Assembly (NCBI GenBank): GCA_907165135.1
Contig: OU015568.1
Location: 2,728,001-2,792,000, forward strand
DNA from: Oikopleura dioica
Taxonomy: Eukaryota; Animalia; Chordata
Direction: 5' to 3'
DNA length: 64,000 bases
Shown here: positions 1,724 through 49,768 of the stretch, in pieces
How positions within the stretch are numbered: position 1 is the first letter of the stretch
How the letters are laid out: each line of letters opens with the position of its first letter
Program-made: the position numbers and the translations under genes
Notes under the pieces: model-generated
The model's database searches: none
What the model saw: the letters and a program-made list of their open reading frames with translations, nothing else
Told to the model about the DNA's origin: nothing

Positions 1724-3477
1724 TCAGCTCTCGTTTCCGAGTTGAGCTATTTTGTAGTTGAGCTGACTGTATCCAAGTCGACCTTCTGTCGTCCAAAAGT
1801 ATATCCTCTTCCTAAAACTAATTTAATTTTCTGGTGAATAATGAAAACTTACGTTCTCGTATCGAAATAAGCTTGTGAGATCGAGAAATTCCCGAAGATT
1901 TCTGAAACTTGATCGACTTTGAAAGTGTGGCTGTTGAAAGCATACTTGACAACGACAGAGTTGTCTCTTGCAAACGACCTGAAGCCGTAGTAGACACCAC
2001 AAGCGATGAAACTCTGCATGAGCCAGTTTCTATGAAGCGTCGAGTGGTATGTTCGGCGGTTTTCCAAGGAGAAGAGGTCGAGACGGGTGAGGACAATATT
2101 CCCATGTGATTCTAAAAAGACTTGTGATGAAGGAGAATAATGGTAAAAGAATGGCCAGTACGGGGATCGAACCTGCGACATTCGCGTTATTAGCACGACG
2201 CTCTAACCAACTGAGCTAACCGGCCTGACCTCGCCTGTTTTCTAGAGGATATCTGTCAGGGACCATTACATCTGTTTATAATATTCTAATAGAAATTAAT
2301 CAGCTTCCTCTGATATGAAAGACATAAGCTTATCAGTATATTTCTTCTTCAAGCGAGCTTTTATATCAAATCTTAGCTGGAGTACCTGTATTGCAGTAAG
2401 TGACCCAGAGGCCAGTCTCGTCCACCGCCAGCTCTACTCCTCCAAGCTCACTGTCTTCATAAGTACACTCTTCTATCGTCGCATGATCCAGCTCCTTTTG
2501 CTTCCTCATTCTTCTAGCAGCGAACTCATATCTGATGATTCCCAGGGGCTTCTCTCTCACATAATACAAAACTCCGTTGTAGACAACGTGACCAGTTCCG
2601 TACCAAGGGTGAGGAAGGTTAAATGTTTCTGCGATTTTGTCAGCGATGAGATCTTCTGTTGAGTTGAATTTCAGGACAGACTTGGACTTTCCTTGTTGCT
2701 GAAAGACATAGATTTCGGAGCCATTCGAGGCGGAATCGGTCAGCCAGGCGCCTTCAGGGACAAGGGAGAAGTTGGCAACGAAGACGGGCTGTTCGAATTC
2801 TAGAGAACAAAGAATGACTTTCTGAAAAAGTAACTGATTCTTACTTGCAATGCCCAAGTTGCAGTCTTCCGGTCTATCAGGATCCATTGTCGTTCCATAC
2901 GGTCGATTATCAATCACTTTCATTCCTGCATCTTTCTCCGCCGAAGCATGAATCAGCCTTCTTTTGACATCATTATCACCGAGGTAGACGATCGTTGCCC
3001 TTGGATAAGCTTTTTGAAAACCCCCGACTCGGTCGACAGCTTCAACGTCCTTCGGCCCAAGTTCGATTTTGAGAAGACTTGATGAGAGATTTCGGAAATT
3101 TTCTTCGAGAATAGTGTCTGTTTCGTTTACTGCTTCTGGGATGCCAAAAACCTTTGAGAAAAATGATTTATTTCGACGGTTTCAGAGATGATTACCTTGA
3201 TTGTCCTTTCATGCGGAACAGATGCGTCCAAGCTCCTTATTTTCCTATTGACTAAAGTCAATTTGTCCGAAACATGGTCCATTCTTTTTGAAAGCTCCAA
3301 AACGCCGTGAACAAGTTTATTTTCCCTTTCAGCCACGTATGTGATGTTTTCAATTAGATCAGCCATTGTCTTTGAATATTTCATGTGCTCGAAACTTATA
3401 AACGTCCCAAGAGCCGCGATACAAATGCAGAAAAACCACCATTTCCGACGCTGGCAGAATTGAAAAAGCAAACTCAT
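1724..3477 (-). CDS. Type II membrane protein: signal-anchor, coiled coil, L1-ORF1p-like RRM, C-terminal olfactomedin domain
   Basis: Exons joined by GT-AG introns (3152-3195; a 45-nt in-frame intron near 2800-2845; ~2110-2394; ~1815-1853). Olfactomedin motifs GAWLTDS, GTGHVVYNGVLYY, VELAVDETGLWVTY, SFIACGVYY and YFDTRTKRIYFW. Stop TGA at 1724-1726. Confidence 0.85.
2152..2225 (-). tRNA. tRNA-Ile(AAU): tRNA-Ile, anticodon AAT
   Basis: Reverse complement GGCCGGTTAGCTCAGTTGGTTAGAGCGTCGTGCTAATAACGCGAATGTCGCAGGTTCGATCCCCGTACTGGCCA: cloverleaf, A box, B box GGTTCGATCC, anticodon loop CT-AAT-AA. Confidence 0.97.
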
Positions 3478-4050
3478 CGTTGAATAACTAATTTAAAAAA
3501 TAAGACTTTTCGATCTTTCGTTTCGTCTCTTCTCTTTTTCATATTCTCATTTTAAGCCGTTTTATCGATTTTGACAGAAAAAAAATGTTTTTGCTCTTAT
3601 TCGAATTGATGCGCCCGTCGGCGATGTCAGAATTCGAAAAAAGGGTTGACCGCTGAATTAAAACACAAGGACGATTCTGTCCTTGGCGCGTATCAAATAA
3701 ATGGTTTGTTTTGATAAATAAAGAATAAAGCGACATGTTCTTCTCCGAGAAGATACCGCTCTTTCAATAAACCCGATGTTGGAATTAAATAATTAAGTGA
3801 GTTCAAGACAATTCAACTCAATAACCAGATTCGAACGGTGAAATGAATGAATAAAAAAAATCAACAGTTCTCGATAAGACTTCTTCTTCTTTGAGTAACA
3901 AAGTGTATTTGTTTATGCAAAAGATATGAGCTGATAAACATTTCCGGTTGTGACAATATCTGACAACAGTGATGATCTTTATTGAAGTTTCAATTCTGAA
4001 ATTCAATAGTGACAATTTTTCTTTGTACTGATTCAAGAAAAAAGAATAAA

Positions 4051-5083
4051 ATGTCGCGGAAAAGAGATAAATGCATTTTTATTTTTGGAATAGTCGCTGC
4101 TTTTTTGTCGCTTTCATTGCTGTTTTCGGCTCCCATGTTTCTGACAAAACAGGATTTTGTTCAAGGACATGATGACAGCAACGTAGACGGTGAAATAAAT
4201 AAATATAAACGTGCTTTCTAATTTTTAGTAACAACTGATGCTACAACGTATAGGACGGAAGAAGCCACTTATATTTTTGACCAAGACAATGATTCATCAA
4301 CTGTTTCTGGCAGTACTTCTTCCGTTGAAAAAGAAACGACCGATTTTCAAACAACTGATAAGGCGGAAGAAATCACTGATAATTCTGAGCAGGTCAATGA
4401 ATCATCAACTGTTCCTGACGGTACTCCTTCCGTTGAAAAAGGAACCACCGATAGCATAACAACTGATATGACGGAAGTAGTCACTGATACTTTTGAGCAA
4501 TTCAGTACACCATCTACTCTGAAAGCCGAATCCACAGAGCCTTCACAAATCGTTCACAAAACGACTGACGCCGAAAAGACAACAACTATTTTCGAGACTG
4601 AATATTCTTCAACTCAAAAGATTCTGTCAACAGTCCCAAAATATTGCGATGGCATCACATGTCTCAATGGCGGAACTTGCAATGAAATGGAAGAAAACTT
4701 TTCTTGCGACTGCATTGACCCTTTTACTGGAGAATATTGTCAAGATCATCCGTGCGATGGATTTTGTCAAAATCATGGAGTTTGCGCTCTTGAATCTGAA
4801 ATCCCGACATGCTCTTGCCGGGACCCATATAAAAGGCTCTAAATTTAAAATTTTTCTTACGTTAGTTATGACAAGTTTTAGAGAGCCCTGATTATAAGTT
4901 GGGGAAAAATGCGAAGATGATGTTTGTAATGGAATCATTTGTGAAAATGGCGGAATCTGTGTTGCCCAAAAGGGACATGCAGCCATTATGCTGCATAATG
5001 GTTATTTTATGAATGATCTGACTTCAAATACTCACAGAAAGTTCACCTGTCAAAAATCACAAAATTGCTTATTCTTTCAATAA
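4051..5083 (+). CDS. Short paralogue of the EGF/C-type-lectin membrane protein (signal-anchor, Thr-rich stalk, 2-3 EGF repeats, lectin domain deleted)
   Basis: MSRKRDKCIFIFGIV... N-terminus, CDGITCLNGGTC EGF repeats. Last exon ends in frame with RKFTCQKSQNC, homologous to the C-terminus of the 5405-7640 gene. Confidence 0.75.
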
Positions 5084-5164
5084 ACAGCAACAAGAAAAAT
5101 CAAATTATTAGTTGCAAGTTTGAATGCTGAGATAATTATTATCTTTATTTTGCGAAAGGAATTT

Positions 5165-5245
5165 TCCTTGTGGCCTGACGATCGGCTTTAAAGCATCCGA
5201 ATTCGATTGAGCCTGAGCATAGCCAGTTGTCGGATCATTTTCTTC
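5165..5245 (-). pseudogene. Duplicated fragment of the penultimate FREM exon
   Basis: About 85% identical to 8155-8235; encodes [21 protein letters not shown] versus [21 protein letters not shown] in FREM. Confidence 0.8.
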
Positions 5246-5404
5246 ATTCAATTTTTTTTTTCAAACTGTATTTGTCTATGCAAAAAGATAACGTTTGATG
5301 CTCCGTTCCGATTATGACAGTATCTGACAATTTTGACGTTCACATTCGAAGATGATACCCTTTTTCTAGACAAATTCGACTCTGACTGTAGCAAGAGAAA
5401 GAGA

Positions 5405-7640
5405 ATGACACGAAAAAGAGATAAATGCATCTTTATTTTTGGAATAATTATGGCTTTTTTGGGGCTCTTGGTGCTTTTCATGGCTCCTCTGTTTCTGACG
5501 AAAAAAGATCTTTTACGCGTTGAAACCCCTTCTTATGACGGTGTGAAAAATTATTTAGAAAAAAGCAATAAATATTGTTTTAGTGACAACTGATGCTTTC
5601 AAAACGCATGATACAGAATTGGTCACTGATATTTTTAAAGAGGACGATGCATCATCTACCCTGAAAGCTGAGTACACAGAGGCCACAGAGATTGTTCTCA
5701 CAACTGTTTTGCCTTGCGCTTATGTTTCTTGTCAAAATGGTGGTAATTGTGTTGTTGAAGCAGCATCTTTTCTGTGCAAGTGCCCGGAGCCTTTTCACGG
5801 AAGCCTCTGCGAGCTCCATCCCTGCGATGGAGTAGATTGCGAGAACAAAGGAATCTGCATCAGTGAATCTGGTAATGCCACATGCTCTTGTCGGGACCCA
5901 TATAGAGGGCTCTTGGATTTCATTTTATGCAATTCTTTAATATATATTAAAAGAGCCCAAAAAATAAATAGGCGATAGATGCCAAACTCATGCTTGCGAG
6001 GCTTTTAATTGCGAGAATGGCGGAACTTGTGTTGTTCAAAAAGGAGCTGGTCGATGCATTTGCGAAGAACCTTTTTCTGGTCAATCCTGCCAAGACCATC
6101 CTTGCGATAACATAACCTGTGAAAATCACGGTGTTTGCGTTATTCAAGCTGGAATTCCAAAATGCTCTTGCCGGGACCCATATAAAGGGCTCTCAAATCA
6201 TATTTTATATAAAGATTTTCGATGAAATGAGAGAGCCCTGGTGATAAACTGGCGACAACTGCGAAACTCATGGTTGTGATGGAATAACCTGCGAAAATGA
6301 CGGAACCTGTGTTGTTCAGAAAAGCAACAGTAAATGCATTTGCAAAGAAAATTTTACTGGTACTCTTTGCGAAGATCACCCTTGCGATGACATTACATGT
6401 GAAAATGGTGGAACTTGTGTTGTGGAAGAGGGAGCAGTAAAATGCAGCTGCGAAGAGACATTTTTTGGTGATTTTTGTGAAAAACATCCATGCGATGGTT
6501 TCGATTGCCAAAATAACGGAACTTGTGTTACCGAATCTGGAGATGCTAAATGCTTTTGTCCTGATCCATACCTAGGGCTCTCTTCATTTCTTTGCATCAT
6601 TGATGCAGCATCAATGACTTTATTATATCGTTTAGAGCCTTTATATGGCGCAATTTATGATTTTTCTTAGCAAAGCCAAGTGAACCCTGATATCAGACAG
6701 GAGATAAGTGTCAAACTCATCCTTGCGATGTAATTTATTGTCAGAACAACGGAAAATGCGAGGTTCAAAATGACGCCGGTTTATGTCTTTGTGAAAAGCC
6801 GTTTTTGGAAATGTCTGCGAACATCATCCTTGCGATGGTATCAACTGTCAAAATGGTGGAACTTGCGATGATCAAAATGAGGTCGGTAAATGCAATTGCC
6901 CAGAGCCATTTTTGGGTGATCTCTGCGATAAACATCCATGTGATGATCTTGAATGCGGTGATCATGGAGACTGTAATGTTGAATCTGGAAATGCTCAATG
7001 TTCTTGTCATGAACCATATGAAGGGCTCTTATCATTTATTTTTGAAAGGCCGTTATTACTAATAACTTATTAGACATGAAACACTACATAAATATTGTCT
7101 CTTATCCTTGCTCGATATGCATATTACTTTGAGCCCTTATATAAGACAGGAGATAAATGCCAAACTCATCCTTGCGATTTAATAACCTGTCAAAATGGTG
7201 GAAACTGTATCGTTGTAAATGGAAACGGTCAATGCAGTTGCTCTGGTTCATTCAGTGGTATATTCTGTCAATGTCCGCCGAATTTTGTACGACCAGCGGA
7301 AAGTTTGAACTGGCAATCGGCAAAAACTTACTGCACTCAAATTGGAGGTTTTTTGGCATTCTTTCGGGACGAGAACGAGTTCAGCATTTTTAAAAACGCT
7401 CGACACGATAATAATGAAGAGTGGATCGGATACCACCAAAAGTACCCCAATAATAATGATATCTACGAAACAGTTGACGGAGAAGAGGCAATTTTCTTCA
7501 ATTGGGATAAGAGTAGCGGTGAACCAAGTAGTGCTGATGAACAATGCGTGAAAATCAAGCCAGCCGAGCAGTTTGTTATGCATGATTCGGGTTGCAACGC
7601 TCTCAGAAAATTTACCTGTATGAAATCGCAAAATTGCTGA
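5405..7640 (+). CDS. Type II membrane protein with ~11 EGF repeats and a C-terminal C-type lectin domain
   Basis: MTRKRDKCIFIFGII... N-terminus; repeated C-x4-C-xNxGxC-x8-CxC-x5-G-x2-C units across exons; lectin motifs LNWQSAKTYC, WIGY, FNWDKSSGEPS, CVKI. Confidence 0.85.
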
Positions 7641-8059
7641 AACTTTTGATATGGAAGAGTTTTTTTTGTGAAAAATGATTTTGCAACACTAATTCAAAAT
7701 AAACACTTATTTCTTTTTTGCCAACAATTTGTTCAGAATTGAAATAATGAAAATACATCTTGAGATATAAAAATGAAAATTCCGAAAATATTTCATATTT
7801 TATTTACAATATTTGAACTTGCATAAGTCGGGAACTAGATACTTTCTTTTGTACAATAATAATGCTGTTTTGACAAATTTTCAAAAAGTAACGTCTTGTG
7901 TGTTTCAGGTTTCTGGGTTGTTCGGGTTCGAATTTGATAGAAAATGAGTTTCAGTAACGATAACTTTTATGATAAGAGGTTTTGAGGTAAAGTACTGAGG
8001 CTTGAGAGGGGTTCTGGTCTTTTTCCCTGGCGAGGAAGACAGGTCGTGTTTTAGAAATT

Positions 8060-11000
8060 CTAGACTTCGGTACCAGATGGTATCGAGGAGTTTGATGAGC
8101 TTGATCCTTCTGAAATTAATACATAAGCTCATTTAATATTTGAAGAGGGATATTACCATGTGGCCTGACAATTGGCTTGAAAGCATCAGAATTCGATCTG
8201 GCCTGGGCATAACCAGTTGTCGGATAATTTCCATCATTTCTTCTTCGGAAGACAACGAGGACAAAGATCGCTAGATTTGAATTAATGCTCTTATTCTAGT
8301 TTCTCTTTCATACCAATAAACAAGATACCGCCAGCAGCCAGGATAATCATCCAGTTAAATTGCGCCTTTTGAGTCTCCATTTCTTCAAATGCTTCTTCTG
8401 ACATCAGACGAATTGGCATCATGTTGGTTCCTCGATCGAAGCCGATTCCGATGTCTTCGGGTGAGGCAGCTCGTCGAACAATTGAGTGTCGTCGGACTCG
8501 TTTAGTCGAAGATCGGACGGTGTAAATTGTGTGGAGGTACCATTCTGCCCCGACATTCACCTGAAAAAATAGAAATAATATCAATAGTTATTTCACTAAA
8601 AACCGAACTAACCTGAAAAAGCGGAGTAGAATCCATTCTGAAACCATCAGATCCTGGCTGCTCGGTCAATCCTTTAGCCGAAGGATCATCGACGGCCAAA
8701 ACAGCATTGAAGGGAACTGAGTTCAAGTTGTCATCTTCTGTGTCTGGCTGCTCTTTATCCTGAAAGCAGTTATTTAGACCACGATAACCAGATTTAATGA
8801 CGTACGATGACTTTGAATCGGTAAAGAAGGAGGTGAGAGTCAGCTAGACATCCATATTCGCTGTTTGCTGGGTTGTATTTGGGAATGTATCCTTCAGATC
8901 CGGAGCACAAGAAGACTTTTTCGATGTTGACGGTAAATCCTTCGCCAAGAGACTGGACGGGATCGACTTGGACTCGCCCATAAATTTGCGCACCTAAAAT
9001 ATCAATAAGCCGATTTCTAGAATAATCGATACATTACCTTCTGGGAAAGCAACATCAGAGCTCTCAGTGACTTGGATGGCCGAGTCGGCAGTCCAAAGAT
9101 CTTTCTTGGAGAGAAGCGAGAAAGTAGTGTTCAAGGAGAATTGTTCAGCAACTGGATCGGAGACTTGTTGGGCACGGAGAGGAAGGGCGAATTCGACTGG
9201 CTCCCTCGGATTGCCTAAAAAGACCATATTAGAAGGATTTTTTCGGGAAATATTTAATTTCAGAAATTTTCTTCCGTTGATTTCTTGTATCACTCTTTTT
9301 TACTCTTTCAACAAATGTGAACTGAATAGGCTCGGGAAGTAAAAATTTAACTTACACTTAGGAGGATCGGAATAAGTCTGATCATGCGAAACTGTGCAAG
9401 GAATCAGTGAAATCTTGTAGTCGCCAGAGTAATCCGTGATAGCATAGTTCGACACGAAGCTCCATTGCTGCTCGGGAGTACTGTAGGTCTTATCGGATCG
9501 AATGAGATTCAGAGTAAAGCTCAATTCAGGGTGCTGGACAGATGTAACCGTCGATTCAGCAGCGCTAGAAAAAAAGTGAGTATTTTGTTGGAGAAAGAGT
9601 CTATTAATAAGAGATCAAGGAGTAAGAATTGTGTGAGTGAGTGATTATTTAGCACCAATGTTATGGAAAATGAACTTACGTGTATCCTACATCAGGATCA
9701 TCCTCGCTAAAAATGAAATGATGAAATGATCATAATGAACGGTGAACTTGAGCTACTAAATGACAAAGAACAAGTGTGCTTCACACGTGAGTTTTCGACT
9801 TTTCTAGAATAATACCTTCCAGGATGTTCCAGGACAAACATTCCAGTGAATCGAGCTACAGTCTTGAATCGGACAACGAGTCGGCCATCAGGTCTGATTT
9901 TCATCGACGTTGGGTAGAAAGTGCCTAAAAGGATGAGAAAATGAGAATTAAGAACTGAACAAACCTGGTAGAGTCGACTCTGGAGGAGTGCCGATTCCGT
10001 CCGTCCACATTTTTGCGGTGTCATAAACGAAAGTCAATCGCAAATTTGTCTCGAGGTCGAAATGTCTCCATGGAATTCTCGTCGGCGAGTGGGAAATGTA
10101 CGAAACATACAGCGGCACCGACAGAGTAACATACGAATGAATCAAGTTCAAGACCTAACAACTATTATTCCTTGTCTATTTGAAAAAGAAAACCTGTCCA
10201 TCTGTTGTGATTTCGCCTCCACAAGCTTGCTGAAGCTCAGACATGTCGTACCATGACTCGAACTCCCAAATACATGCTTCGAGATTGAGGTTTTTATAGA
10301 ATTGAAGAGTTCGCTCAGATCGTAGGTTTCGATCGAACTGGTAAGGCATCAGGTCGTTGTCAGAGTAGATTTTGGGATTGGAGGTAGCATTTGTCAGGAA
10401 GCCAAAATTAGTACGCACTTCTCGCGGAAGAAGCAAATTTGAGCAACTAGAAATATTGTTCAGGGGAACGAAAAAGTGATTCACTAAGGAAGGCTAGCAT
10501 GCAGTTATCGTGCTTATCCTATCAATTTTTGGTTAAAAATCATGGATAAAAGAATTGATTAGTTGAGTTTTGAGCATTTTGATATTAGATTTATGACTAC
10601 GATTTGTCACCTATGCATTTGTGCGAGGAACCCACTGAAATATTTATTATTTTCAGTTCATTTTGTTGTTATCAGCTATGCTGGAGTTCTGCTAGTGAAA
10701 CCCTATGCATACTTAAAATTAAGCAAGTGGATACCTATGCTGTGAGCTTCGGGTGGAATCTTCAGACATTGTGAATTCAAAGTTGGTAAGCTGTTTTGTC
10801 GAGATAAGAGGAATAATGCCATCAGTGTGAGGTAGAATCACAGAGACCTTGATGGTGTTTGGATGATGTTCGTCGTCTCCGTCGATGTATCGGATTTTAG
10901 CGCTGAATGGATCAGCTCCCATGACACCTTAAGGCCAGATGAGTTTCTAGCTTGAATAGAAGAGGATACCTTCTTGTCTTGGAGGACAAATTCCTTCGTT

Positions 11001-45780: not shown

Positions 45781-47669
45781 CTATAAATTGAACATTACAA
45801 TTCTTCTATCTGTCGGACTCCAATTCTCTTCCGCCGAAGAAATATTCGGACTCAGCAAAACATCTTTTCTGTAACCGAATATCTTCATCAGGACTTTGCA
45901 TCTTGCTTCAATTTGCGAAATCTCCGTGGCATTGAATTTCTCAGCGTCGAGCCCTTTTTTCCAGCCGTCAAAAAGCTCGGCTTCTGTTTTTCCTTTGTTG
46001 ATACTAAAGAAGGATTTTCTTACTTATAAGATTGTTAACACAAGATCTTAAAATATAACAACTTAACAATTTTCCAATCTCTCCTGAATGTGTTGCTTCA
46101 TAAAACTTTTCAACAAACTCTTTGCTCATCTCGACATCAAGCTTCTTATAAATCTGGGCTGTCAGTTCAGCCGGAAATCTGGATATATCTTCATAGCGAA
46201 CAAAAATGACATTTTGAGCAATTTTGGAATCAAGGAAGAAATCAAGTGTTTTTTCGCAATCGTCGAATACTTTCTCGACAGTCTGCTCGGCCTTGTAAAA
46301 ACTCCTTAATTTTCGCCTTGATAAGAGCATGCTTCTTGGATCCCGGACGAGTCGGATGATTTTCAAATTGATTTTTGGCTTCAATAGGTGATAAAGATCC
46401 TCCGGACCGTCCAGACGAAATTCTTTTATTGCGACGCCTTTTTTCTCGCCGCAGAACCGGATAAGTTTTTCTTTTCCTACTTCGGTTTTAAACGGGTCGG
46501 AGCAGTTTTTGCACCACATCTTTGCTTCTTGACAAAACGGCGGGCTGCAAAGCGTTTCTGAACCGAGCCAATGGCCAATAGTGTGAGAAAATTGAACACG
46601 ATCTTTTGGGTTGTTTTTGCGATTTCTTGGCACTTGACAACTGTAGGCTTCCTCGAGGATTTCTCGGCGTTCTGTTAGACTTCCGGTTAGAGGCTCGAAA
46701 TACTTTCATTATGGCTTTGAAGGGGTAAGATAATTTAAGAAAGAGATTTATAAAAAGCCTTTCATAAAGAAAATCGGGATTCTGGTCAAAAATTGAGCCA
46801 AGAAACGAAGACCCAGAACGGAAGGAAGCTGAAATATAAATATTCTTTCTTAAAGTTCGCTCATCCACCATAAACCCCGTCGAAGAGATGATGAAGTCAG
46901 AGATCTCTTTTGTTTTCCAAGAATACAATCCAATAAAAGGTATCTTTCAAAGATTTGAAATTTCTCTTGAAAAAAATGTCTCAATACTGTTCAAATCAAT
47001 TCCAAAAGAAACATAAAAAGAAAACAATGTTCAGACGTCATTTCTCGAAGTGCGACAATCTTTGATGCTAATCGACAGAAATGTTGGCAAAAAATGGCAG
47101 CTTTTATAGCTAAGTTAACTGTCTCTGAACTGCGGACATAAACCAGGATGAATAAAAAATAATTTAAGGTAAAGTAAGCATGACGGTCAAATATGGGCGA
47201 CGTTTTTCAAGAATGGTTCTCTGGAAGTTTGATTTTTGCCTGACCAACTTGAACTCTCTTACGCTTCGATATGAATTCGATTTTCTCTATCATAATTTTT
47301 TTGATATGACCAGTACTCCGAAAAATCATTTTTCCGGAATCTGATTTGAACAAATACTGCCTTGTTATTCAAGATTGCTCGAAAAAATATTTTCAAATCC
47401 TTTCCAAAAGAAAAACCAAGGAAAAAAATTTTGGAGTAATCTGTTGAGACGTCATCTCTGAAAGTTCGAATATAACCTACCTTTCGACCAAACACGTCGT
47501 TCATAAAATAGGCGCAATAAAAATTTATTACTTTGGCCCGTTGATACTTTTGCCCAGTCTGAACAACCTGAGCGAATATTAAGAAAAGTACTGTTTTGAT
47601 AACGTTACCTGTAATGATACGTGTTTTAATCCCAAACGAAAGTTTTTGCTGTTGTGGTATTTGATACAC
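45781..47669 (-). CDS. Carbohydrate (Gal/GlcNAc/GalNAc-6-O) sulfotransferase, copy 1
   Basis: 5'-PSB motif IYISASFRSGSSFLGSIFDQNPDFLY/YFEPL; 3'-PB motif KIIRLVRDPRS; FVRYED. 5' end approximate. Confidence 0.85.
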
Positions 47670-47838: not shown

Positions 47839-49768
47839 CTAAAAATTTACGGTTACAATTCTTCTATCGCTCGGACTCCAATTCTTTTCGGCCGAAGAAA
47901 TATTCTGACTCAGCAAACCATCTCTTCTGTAGCCGAATATTTTCATCAGAACTTTGCATCTTGCTTCAATTTGTGAAATCTCCGTGGCATTAAATTTCCC
48001 AGCGTCGAGCCCTTTTTTCCATCCGTCAAAAAGCTCGGCTTCTGTTTTTTCTTTATTGATACTGAAGGAGGTTTTTTTCACTCATAAGATTGTGAACAGA
48101 TGATTATTGAAGACCTATCATCATTACCACTTTATATTTATTCAATCTTTTCCTGAATGCGTCGCTTCATAAAAGTTGGTTGAGAACTCTTTGCTCATTT
48201 CGACATCAAGTTTCTTATAAATCTGAGCTGTTACTTCAGCCGGAAATCTTGATATATCTTCATAGCGAACAAAAATGACATATTTAGCAATTTTGGAATC
48301 AAGGAAGAAATCAAGTGTCTTTTCGCAATCGTCGAATACTTTGTCGACGGCCTGCTCGGCTTTGTATACTTTGCTTAGTTTTCGCCTTGATAAGAACATG
48401 CTTCTTGGATCTCGCACAAGTCGGATGATTTTCAAATTGATCTCTGGCTTCAATAAGTGATAAAGATCCTCCGGACCGTGCAGACGAAATTCTTTTATTG
48501 CGACGCCTTTTTTCTCGCCACAGAATTGAATAAGTTTTTCTTTTCCAACTTTGGTTTTGAATGGGTCCGGGCATTTCTGGCACCACATCTTTGCTTCTTG
48601 ACAAAATGGCGGGCTGCAAAGCGTTTCTGATCCGTACCAGTGGCCGATAGTGTGAGACAATTGAACACGATCTCTTGGGTTGTCCTTGCGATTTCTAGGG
48701 AGTTGGCAACTGTAGGCTTCTTCGAGAATTTCTCGGCGTTCTGTAAGACTTCCCGTTAGCGGCTCAAAATACTTATCATGGCTTTTGAGACCGAATAAGA
48801 TGAGTCTGATAATGGGTTTTTTAATCAAAAGTAAGGGGGGTTCTGAAAAGCCTTTCATATAGAAAATCAGGATTCTGGTCAAAAATAGAGCCAAGAAACG
48901 AAGAACCAGATCGGAAAGACGCTGAAATATAAATATTCTTTCTTGAAGTTCGTTCATCAAGCGTAAACCCTGTCGAGGAGATGATGAAGTCGGAGATCTC
49001 TTTCGTTTTCCAAGAATACAGTCCTATGAAGGGTATCTTTTAAAGATTTGAAATTGTCAATTTCTCTTGAAGAAAAAGCAGAATAATGTTCAAATCAATT
49101 CCAAAAGAAAAATTGGGAGGTAACAATGCTTATGCTTAGACGACATCTCTCTAAATGCGACAATTTTTGTAATAATTGACAGAAGTGCTGGCTAACAAAT
49201 GGCAGCAAAAATGCTCTTGACTTATGCGGACGTATATCAAGATAAATGAAAATAATTGAGGGTAAAGTAAGCATGACGGTGAGACCTGGTCGAAGAATGG
49301 TTCTCTAAAGTAAAAATTTGATTTTTGCCTGACAAATTTCCATTCTCTCTCTTGCTTCGAAATGAAGTAGATATTCTCTATCATACTTGTCTCGGCCATG
49401 GAAAGTTTATTTTCACGACTTTTAGCGGACGTCTGGAGATAGAAATAATTGATATCATATCAGCACGTGTGAAATCATTTTTCTGGAATCTGATTTGAAC
49501 AAATATTTCCTTGTCATTCAAGATCGCTTATTAACAGTAAGTTCAAATCATATAACCAAAGCCTTTGGTGCAAAGGAAAAAATTTTGGATAAATTTGTCC
49601 CCGGTCAAGACCAATTTGAGTCATTTGTTTATTTATAATTATATTCGTATGTACAGATAAAGCAACGATTACATAATAGAAAGAAACAGAAATATTTTTA
49701 CTTATATTTTTCCAATTTTTCTTGAAGTTTTTTGATTTGAATCGCTCTCTCTGCATTATGCAATGCAT
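47839..49768 (-). CDS. Carbohydrate sulfotransferase, copy 2 (tandem duplicate, ~2.06-kb offset)
   Basis: Same motifs as copy 1 (SASFRSGSSFLG, YFEPL, LVRDPRS, VRYED); 5' exons more divergent and start uncertain. Confidence 0.75.

What the first reader, a model, noticed from the sequence alone, without database searches (positions are those of the whole stretch)
4835..7149. Five homologous GG-donor introns with a fixed 13-nt ruler, two apparently ending in TG
Introns 4835-4901, 5908-5971, 6188-6251, 6576-6700 and 7024-7149 all interrupt EGF repeats at PY[KRLE]G. All start GGCTCT and carry (G)AGCCC (GAACCC in one) near the end. In all five the EGF frame resumes exactly 13 nt after the CCC, although intron length (64-126 nt) and interior differ. 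Three end in AG; 6188-6251 and 4835-4901 end in TG at the same position. For 6188-6251 I found no in-frame AG alternative (an in-frame TAA precedes it). This suggests the hairpin, not the AG, positions the 3' splice site.
Basis: seen in the sequence. Interest (0 to 1): 0.8.

Follow-up and report, generated by a model that had tools for sequence, protein, structure and literature searches.

The report
Stem-closed odd introns in Oikopleura
Five related short introns in two neighbouring Oikopleura dioica genes keep a small RNA stem joining their two ends. One of them cannot end in the usual AG, but no RNA data could be obtained to show where any of them is actually cut.

Summary
The sequence observation is correct. 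The window is Oikopleura dioica (Okinawa assembly OKI2018_I69, PAR chromosome). Two tandem genes encode type-II membrane proteins with EGF repeats and a C-type lectin domain.

Five homologous introns sit at the same EGF position. Each pairs GGGCUC(U) at its start with (A)GAGCCC 13 nt before the resumed frame. A sixth homologue on a Tara Oceans scaffold keeps the arms, the 13-nt spacing and an AG. The loops are randomised and the arms nearly invariant, so the arms are under selection. There is no covariation.

The TG reading is not established:
- Intron 4835-4901 has an in-frame AG 3 nt upstream, and its downstream exon is a deletion relic.
In that register the "T" of TG is a codon wobble base.
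- Intron 6188-6251 has no AG 3' end in any register that keeps its intact downstream exon.
- Gene B also has a 1-nt frameshift in exon 5.

The RNA runs laid on the region gave no coverage. This scan has already noted stem-closed non-GT introns on other pieces of this genome, so this is a further, well-conserved example. Splice positions remain unproven.

The parts
4051..5083 (+). Gene A, a truncated paralogue. Exon 1 is 4051-4189, a GT-AG intron is 4190-4228, exon 2 is 4229-4834, then intron i1, then a relic last exon up to the stop at 5081-5083.
   Evidence: The public model (222 aa) ends at the stop at 4840-4842 inside i1. The last exon lacks most of the lectin domain and has lost a Cys and the original stop, compared with L002.
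4835..4901 (+). An alternative GG-AG reading is 4835-4898. The 5' arm is GGCTCT at 4835-4840 and the 3' arm is AGAGCC(C) at 4882-4888.
   Evidence: The stem is part of the minimum-energy fold. Only 15 of 300 shuffles gave a stem as good.
5405..7640 (+). Gene B (public model OKI2018_I69.PAR.g9191). It encodes a signal anchor, a stalk, about 11 EGF modules and a C-type lectin domain. Exons by frame logic are 5405-5540, 5584-5907, 5972-6187, 6252-6575, 6701-7023 and 7150-7640.
   Evidence: Pfam EGF and Lectin_C. The first intron, 5541-5583, is GT-AG and agrees with the public model.
5908..5971 (+). Intron i2, GG-AG, 64 nt. The arms are GGGCTCTT at 5907-5914 and AAGAGCCC at 5951-5958.
   Evidence: The 8-bp stem is in the minimum-energy fold. 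Only 1 of 300 shuffles did as well.
6188..6251 (+). Intron i3, GG..TG, 64 nt. No AG 3' end is possible in any register. The arms are AGGGCTCTC at 6186-6194 and GAGAGCCCT at 6231-6239. An in-frame TAA lies at 6245-6247.
   Evidence: fold z-score -3.1; 0 of 300 shuffles.
6576..6700 (+). Intron i4, GG-AG, 125 nt. The terminal 3' arm is degenerate (GAACCC at 6682-6687). A perfect internal copy of the arm (AGAGCC) lies at 6634-6639.
   Evidence: The internal arm plus the start of the spacer resembles the i5 end (9 of 500 shuffles).
6799..6818 (+). Site of a 1-nt deletion that shifts the frame of exon 5. The exon is 323 nt, where its sister exons are 324 nt.
   Evidence: The site lies in a run of short homopolymers, in an assembly built from Nanopore reads (PMC8008620).
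7020..7149 (+). Intron i5. The arms are AAGGGCTC at 7021-7028 and GAGCCCTT at 7131-7138.
   Evidence: One search shows that the public protein maps only to 7020-7145.

Best explanation
These are real, homologous, short nuclear introns of two tandem Oikopleura dioica genes. One ancestral intron was copied along with the EGF module.

They belong to the animal's class of non-GT introns. In this family a 6-9 bp helix, GGGCUC(U) with (A)GAGCCC, ties the donor to a site about 10 nt before the acceptor.

Shown here: the two arms have been kept by selection while the loop sequence and length drifted freely.

Inferred: the helix makes up for a donor that cannot pair with U1. It does so by holding the donor next to the branch and acceptor region (a CUGAU/CUGAC-like motif directly follows the 3' arm). 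The cuts are then made at usable nucleotides within a fixed total of about 13 unpaired bases at the foot of the helix.

The exact register is not established.

The TG ends are unproven. Intron i1 can use an AG 3 nt upstream. Intron i3 must either use a non-AG 3' end or be removed together with exon 4.
For: - The organism and gene are identified.
- Arms and spacing are the same in 5 paralogues plus the Tara scaffold L002, which shares only 51% protein identity in the lectin exon.
- The loops are no more alike than shuffled sequence, yet 6 core pairs are intact in 5 of 6 copies and 83% of cells are paired.
- The stem is part of the minimum-energy fold of the three short introns, and stems beat shuffles.
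- The donor GGCUCU matches the U1-complementary consensus only at +1 and +6 (read from the sequence, against established knowledge of the consensus).
- Other non-GT introns checked here also carry stems. These are two sulfotransferase GA-AG introns and the GA-AG and GC-AG introns of paralogue P0002, which score highest among its 11 introns.
- The unpaired bases at the foot of the helix add up to 12-14 in all of these.
- Exon 4, downstream of i3, is an intact 108-codon EGF exon.
Against: - No RNA was obtained. The four RNA runs gave 2-4 partial reads each, all outside the two genes and only 90-95% alike.
- There is no covariation, so a helix cannot be told apart from two conserved sequence motifs or transposon-end relics.
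- In i4 the perfect arm is internal and not next to the splice site.
- The public model skips exons 3-5a.
- Gene B carries a frameshift, so part of the gene may be decaying.
- The control set of GT-AG introns is small (9).
Confidence: 0.55

Rival explanations
1. The hairpin acts as a strict 13-nt ruler that sets the 3' cut whatever the dinucleotide, so TG is used in i1 and i3.
For: - The 13 nt after CCC is found in 6 of 6 homologues.
- i3 has no AG.
- i1 and i3 are sister copies by their flanking exons (83% and 76% identity). Both have YTG|G although their loops are randomised.
Against: - i1 has an in-frame AG at 4898, and the TG reading there destroys the invariant Gly.
- The public model cuts i5 9 nt after the CCC.
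- The internal perfect arm of i4 is not followed by a usable cut.
- Other stem-closed introns have spacers of 7-10 nt.
- The spacer sequence, not only its length, is conserved, so equal length may be inherited.
Confidence: 0.2
2. Register shifted 4 nt upstream for all copies. The cuts would lie 3-4 nt before the helix and 9 nt after it, with no fixed terminal dinucleotides (AA-AA, AG-AA, AA-AA, CT-AG, GA-AG). This would be a Euglena-like structure-guided intron. The 'TG' would then be Thr/Val codon wobble plus the first base of the Gly codon.
For: - The public model uses exactly this register for i5. From my knowledge of AUGUSTUS, it accepts GA-AG only with an RNA hint, which suggests read support.
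- The junction residue becomes V, I, T, T, T, T. This matches I/V at the same EGF position in the intronless paralogues P0007, P0008 and P0010, and it restores the Gly in i1.
- The third base of the upstream codon is A in 6 of 6 while its first two bases vary. That is the opposite of a coding pattern.
- The geometry then resembles the other stem-closed introns.
Against: - It needs non-G donors in 5 of 6 and AA acceptors in 3 of 6, which is unknown for O. dioica in the papers I could read (G*-AG only).
- Whether the public model rests on RNA hints is my inference, not a tool result.
Confidence: 0.2
3. The TG ends are dead acceptors. Gene A's 3' part is a relic, and in gene B exon 4 (or exons 3-5) is skipped or the gene is decaying. 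All exons are phase 1-1, so skipping keeps the frame.
For: - Gene A's last exon has an internal deletion of the lectin domain, a lost Cys and a shifted stop compared with L002, whose matching intron ends in AG.
- Gene B has a frameshift in exon 5.
- The public models end gene A in i1 and skip exons 3-5a of gene B.
- No listed public RNA run holds the stretch.
Against: - Exons 3 and 4 are intact, with all Cys kept.
- The arms and spacer of i1 and i3 are as well kept as in the AG copies.
- The 927-nt intron of the public model breaks two EGF domains and looks like a gene-finder's way round the frameshift.
- The frameshift sits in short homopolymers of a Nanopore-based assembly and may be an error.
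Confidence: 0.25
4. The arms are only relics of the terminal inverted repeats of a small DNA transposon that became an intron, and they play no part in splicing.
For: A 368-bp element with 14-bp perfect inverted ends beginning AAGGGCTC sits in an EGF exon of a related gene. It is present in two independent metagenome samples (L007 and L009).
Against: - Neutral relics would have decayed as the loops did.
- No target-site duplication lies next to the arms.
- All window copies are explained by tandem duplication.
Confidence: 0.1
5. The T of TG is an assembly error.
For: The assembly is Nanopore-based, the region is repetitive, and there is one likely homopolymer error nearby.
Against: Two separate sister introns carry the same T, and substitution errors are rarer than homopolymer indels.
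Confidence: 0.05

Closest known systems
Oikopleura dioica non-canonical G*-AG introns (GA-AG, GC-AG, GG-AG; 11-12% of introns; PMC8008620 citing Denoeud 2010; PMC7072748)
   Same: Same species. The introns are short, have a G plus non-T donor, and end in AG in 3-4 of 5 copies. They are presumably removed by the only (U2-type) spliceosome.
   Different: The papers I could search do not describe end-to-end stems. One copy here cannot end in AG.
Euglena nonconventional introns (code N3-CDG ... CHG-N5-6 | R; PMC12501133)
   Same: A short helix joins the two intron ends at fixed distances from both cuts. The terminal dinucleotides may be free.
   Different: The arm sequence and offsets differ, and the lineage is unrelated. 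In Euglena the code was shown by knock-in experiments, whereas here nothing is shown at the RNA level.
Transposon-derived introns (introners): Fritillaria borealis, Amoebophrya, Micromonas (PMC11282704, PMC7789003)
   Same: Inverted-repeat ends that can form a hairpin. The Fritillaria case is in a related larvacean. A transposon-like element with the same end motif occurs in a related gene (L007).
   Different: The copies here arose by tandem duplication, not by dispersal. There is no adjacent target-site duplication, and the copies are old (loops randomised).
3' splice-site choice through secondary structure between branch point and AG in yeast (from memory: Meyer et al. 2011, Mol Cell; not checked here)
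   Same: RNA structure near the 3' end changes which acceptor is reachable.
   Different: In yeast an AG is still required, and the structure does not involve the donor.

Membership tests
O. dioica G*-AG non-canonical spliceosomal intron | The donor begins with G followed by A, C or G | tested here: met
The public model has GA for i5. Both rest on reading-frame logic only.
O. dioica G*-AG non-canonical spliceosomal intron | The intron ends in AG | tested here: inconclusive
   i2, i4 and i5 end in AG. i1 does so only with the alternative end at 4898. i3 cannot in any register.
O. dioica G*-AG non-canonical spliceosomal intron | The intron is removed from the mRNA at these positions | tested here: inconclusive
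   The reads laid from 4 RNA runs gave no coverage of the genes, and no RNA run was listed as holding the stretch.
Stem-closed non-GT introns of this genome (the class noted earlier in this scan) | The start of the intron pairs with a site about 10 nt before its end | tested here: met
   A 6-9 bp helix is present in 5 of 6 homologues. The spacer is 13 nt, or 9 nt in the upstream register.
Stem-closed non-GT introns of this genome (the class noted earlier in this scan) | The stem is kept through compensatory changes | tested here: not met
   Four pairs never vary, and only one outer pair changes on both sides. The support comes from conservation, not covariation.
Euglena-type nonconventional intron | CAG/CTG-type arms at +4..+6 and -8..-6, with 3-nt and 5-6-nt spacers | tested here: not met
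   The arms are GGGCUC and GAGCCC. The offsets are 0 and 13, or 3-4 and 9.
Introner / MITE-derived intron | Terminal inverted repeats flanked directly by a target-site duplication | tested here: not met
   Inverted arms are present. The only direct repeat (NNAG) lies 9 nt from the 3' arm.
Introner / MITE-derived intron | Many similar copies dispersed in unrelated genes | tested here: not met
   In 64 kb the copies occur only in this tandem family. The whole genome was not searchable.

The most novel reading that the evidence does not exclude
In this chordate a short helix, not the terminal dinucleotides, sets both cuts of a class of introns. The true junctions of this family would then lie 4 nt upstream of the apparent GG..AG/TG boundaries, and the ends could be almost any bases (AA-AA, CT-AG, GA-AG). 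That would be a Euglena-like structure-guided mode of splicing working alongside ordinary GT-AG splicing in an animal.
Probability: 0.2. Interest if true: 0.85.

Novelty: new variant of a known kind. Interest (0 to 1): 0.5.

Why it matters
How O. dioica splices the 11-12% of its introns that lack GT is unexplained in the papers I could read. A variant U1 has been proposed, and no structural explanation has been given.

This family is a compact test set:
- six homologous introns have the same helix but different loops and lengths;
- one has a degenerate arm plus an internal decoy arm;
- one has two possible registers;
- one cannot end in AG.

A few RT-PCRs and minigene mutations would show three things: whether the helix is needed, whether it fixes the cut positions, and whether an animal spliceosome tolerates a non-AG acceptor when the ends are clamped.

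Tried and rejected
- **RNA reads.** My single read-laying run (X4, X5, X6, X1 on 2300-7800) gave 2-4 partial reads per run. All were 90-95% alike and lay mostly in the neighbouring olfactomedin gene. I take these runs to be from another lineage, so they say nothing about splicing or expression here.
- **Protein searches.** Exon 4 alone found nothing. The public model P0001 found only itself and P0005. A lectin-exon profile found only intronless or unrelated environmental relatives. No OdB3 or other-lineage orthologue was reached.
- **Metagenome scan with the lectin profile.** It returned 2 loci, neither with the same intron.
- **Relics of exon sequence inside the two long introns.** Not significant, apart from the duplicated 3' arm in i4.
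- **Rfam.** No known RNA family in 4000-7800.
- **Frame-logic survey of FREM introns in the window.** Too unconstrained without homologues, so I abandoned it.
- **Search for the L007 transposon end in the window.** No match.
- **Denoeud 2010.** The paper could not be read.
- **Joined spliced model.** I did not build or search one.
Full report
**What and where**

The window is Oikopleura dioica, Okinawa assembly OKI2018_I69 (GCA_907165135.1), PAR chromosome OU015568.1. The best database match to the last exon is the public protein Oidioi.mRNA.OKI2018_I69.PAR.g9191.t1, encoded on that record.

The region holds two tandem paralogous genes. Each has an N-terminal signal anchor, a Ser/Thr-rich stalk, EGF modules and a C-terminal C-type lectin domain.
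- Gene B runs from 5405 to 7640.
- Gene A runs from 4051 to about 5083 and is a shortened copy.

Both genes have an ordinary GT-AG first intron of 39 and 43 nt.

- Five intervals interrupt EGF modules after C-x-C-x-x-P-Y-x. Each starts GGCTCT and carries CCC exactly 13 nt before the frame resumes.
- Three end in AG. 4835-4901 (i1) and 6188-6251 (i3) end in TG.
- The motif pair is far above chance and is confined to this locus.
- All flanking exons are phase 1-1. All have lengths that are multiples of 3, except exon 5 of gene B.

**The arms form a conserved helix**

The exon's last G plus GGCUC(U) is the reverse complement of (A)GAGCCC.
- In the three 64-67-nt introns this stem is part of the minimum-energy fold.
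- The stems beat shuffled controls: 0-15 of 300 shuffles do as well, except for the degenerate terminal arm of i4.
- The loops between the arms are no more alike than shuffled sequence in any pair.
- In contrast, six core pairs are intact in five of six homologues.

So both arms are under purifying selection. GGCUCU matches the U1-complementary donor consensus only at +1 and +6, so donor recognition by U1 does not explain its conservation. There is no useful covariation, because four pairs never vary. The helix is therefore inferred from complementarity plus conservation. It is not proven.

**An independent homologue**

A 685-bp Tara Oceans scaffold (L002, protein P0005) shares 51% protein identity in the lectin exon. 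It carries a 91-nt intron at the same place with the same features:
- the same start (CTAG|GGCTCT);
- the same 3' arm (GAGCCC);
- the same 13-nt spacing;
- an AG end.

Its 3' end is closest to gene A. Related genes without this intron exist in the Bergen genome and in metagenomes (L003, L004).

**Why the TG reading is not secure**

1. *Intron i1.* The AG at 4897-4898 is in frame and gives a 64-nt GG-AG intron. The TG reading turns the invariant Gly into Arg.
   - Gene A's last exon lacks most of the lectin domain.
   - It has lost a Cys and its original stop.
   - The public model ends gene A at a stop inside i1.
2. *The public model of gene B.* It maps uniquely to GT-AG 5541-5583, GT-AG 5872-6798 and GA-AG 7020-7145.
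   - From my knowledge of AUGUSTUS, non-GT/GC donors are used only with RNA hints, so this junction probably has read support. That is an inference.
   - The 927-nt intron breaks two EGF domains and neatly bypasses the frameshift. I take it for a prediction artefact.
3. *A second register.* The same 4-nt-upstream register is in frame for all six homologues.
   - The "T" of TG is then a wobble base.
   - Intronless paralogues have I or V at this very position.
   - In this register i1 keeps its Gly.
   - Against it, the introns would begin AA, AG, AA, CT, GA, CT, and three would end in AA. That is unknown for this species.
4. *Intron i4.* It has a perfect internal copy of the 3' arm at 6634-6639. 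No in-frame splice follows it, and the arm next to the real acceptor is degenerate.
5. *Other stem-closed introns checked here.*
   - The two sulfotransferase GA-AG introns (46763-46703 and 48856-48772, minus strand) have the 3' arm 10 and 8 nt from the cut.
   - The GC-AG and GA-AG introns of paralogue P0002 have it 9 and 7 nt from the cut.
   - What these share with the present family is the sum of unpaired bases on both sides of the helix, which is 12-14.

**What remains robust**

Intron i3 has no AG 3' end in any register that keeps exon 4, because of the in-frame TAA at 6245-6247. Exon 4 is an intact 108-codon, three-EGF exon.

i1 and i3 are sister copies by their flanking exons. They share Y-T-G|G although their loops are randomised.

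So one of two things is true:
- a non-AG end (TG or AA) is used; or
- exon 4 is skipped. All exons are symmetric, so skipping keeps the frame.

**State of gene B**

Exon 5 is 323 nt, not 324. One base is missing in a run of short homopolymers at 6799-6818. This is either a residual error of the Nanopore-based assembly (PMC8008620) or a real lesion. I could not test which.

**RNA**

No public RNA run was listed as holding the stretch. The four runs I laid on it gave only 2-4 partial reads each. All were 90-95% alike and none lay in the two genes. These runs appear to come from another lineage. The result says nothing about splicing.

**Origin**

A related EGF/lectin gene on two independent metagenome contigs (L007 and L009, 99.3% identical) carries a 368-bp element in an EGF exon.
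- The element has perfect 14-bp inverted ends beginning AAGGGCTC.
- Removing exactly 375 nt restores the reading frame.
- None of the seven equivalent cuts ends in AG.

The shared end motif suggests that the arms of the present family descend from such a transposon. This rests on a 7-8-nt match only.

**Literature**

- O. dioica has 11-12% non-GT/AG introns (PMC8008620). GA-AG introns are abundant and unexplained (PMC7072748).
- I found no paper describing end-to-end stems in them.
- The closest mechanistic parallel is the Euglena code, with fixed spacers around a short helix (PMC12501133).
- Transposon-derived hairpin introns are known in Fritillaria and Amoebophrya (PMC11282704, PMC7789003).

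**Earlier notes of this scan**

Unchecked AI notes report the same class of stem-closed non-GT introns on other pieces of this genome. One RPL7 intron is said to end in TG and still be removed. I used them as leads only.

**Verdict**

- The helix is well supported.
- The "13-nt ruler" and the TG acceptors are unproven and depend on the register.
- One intron truly lacks any AG option.

Noticed in passing
window 6799-6818: A 1-nt deletion shifts the frame of exon 5 of gene B (323 nt against 324 nt in sister exons). It lies in short homopolymers, so it may be an assembly error or a real lesion.
   Followed up: partly
window 5872-6798: The public model g9191.t1 uses a 927-nt GT-AG intron that cuts through two EGF domains and skips three intact EGF exons. 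It is probably a gene-finder's way round the frameshift and the non-canonical introns.
   Followed up: partly
window 4902-5083: The last exon of gene A fuses the start of an EGF to the last ~30 codons of the lectin domain. It has a lost Cys and a read-through of the original stop. The Tara homologue L002 has the full domain.
   Followed up: partly
L007:815-1182 and L009:1-117: A 368-bp transposon-like element with perfect 14-bp inverted ends (AAGGGCTCCAAATT) lies inside an EGF exon of a related larvacean gene, in two independent samples. Removing exactly 375 nt restores the frame, but no equivalent cut has a G*-AG form.
   Followed up: partly
window 46703-46763 and 48772-48856 (minus strand): Two paralogous sulfotransferase GA-AG introns start TAT|GAAAGGCTTT, very like TAT|GAAGGGCTCT of i5 in the public register. 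Their 6-7 bp stems end 10 and 8 nt before the acceptor.
   Followed up: partly
L005:8437-8497 and 8751-8848: In paralogue P0002 (same chromosome, about 175 kb away) the only two non-GT introns of 11 have the best end-to-end stems. The GC-AG intron pairs GUGCUC with GAGCGC, again a GCUC/GAGC core.
   Followed up: partly
window 6631-6646: Intron i4 holds a second, perfect copy of the 3' arm plus the start of the spacer, 64 nt from its start. This suggests that a 64-nt ancestor was lengthened at its 3' side.
   Followed up: partly
window 4882-4888, 6231-6238: The 3' arm (G)AGAGCC contains AGAG, as does the conserved ACAGAGA box of U6 snRNA that normally contacts the donor. This may be coincidence.
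   Followed up: no
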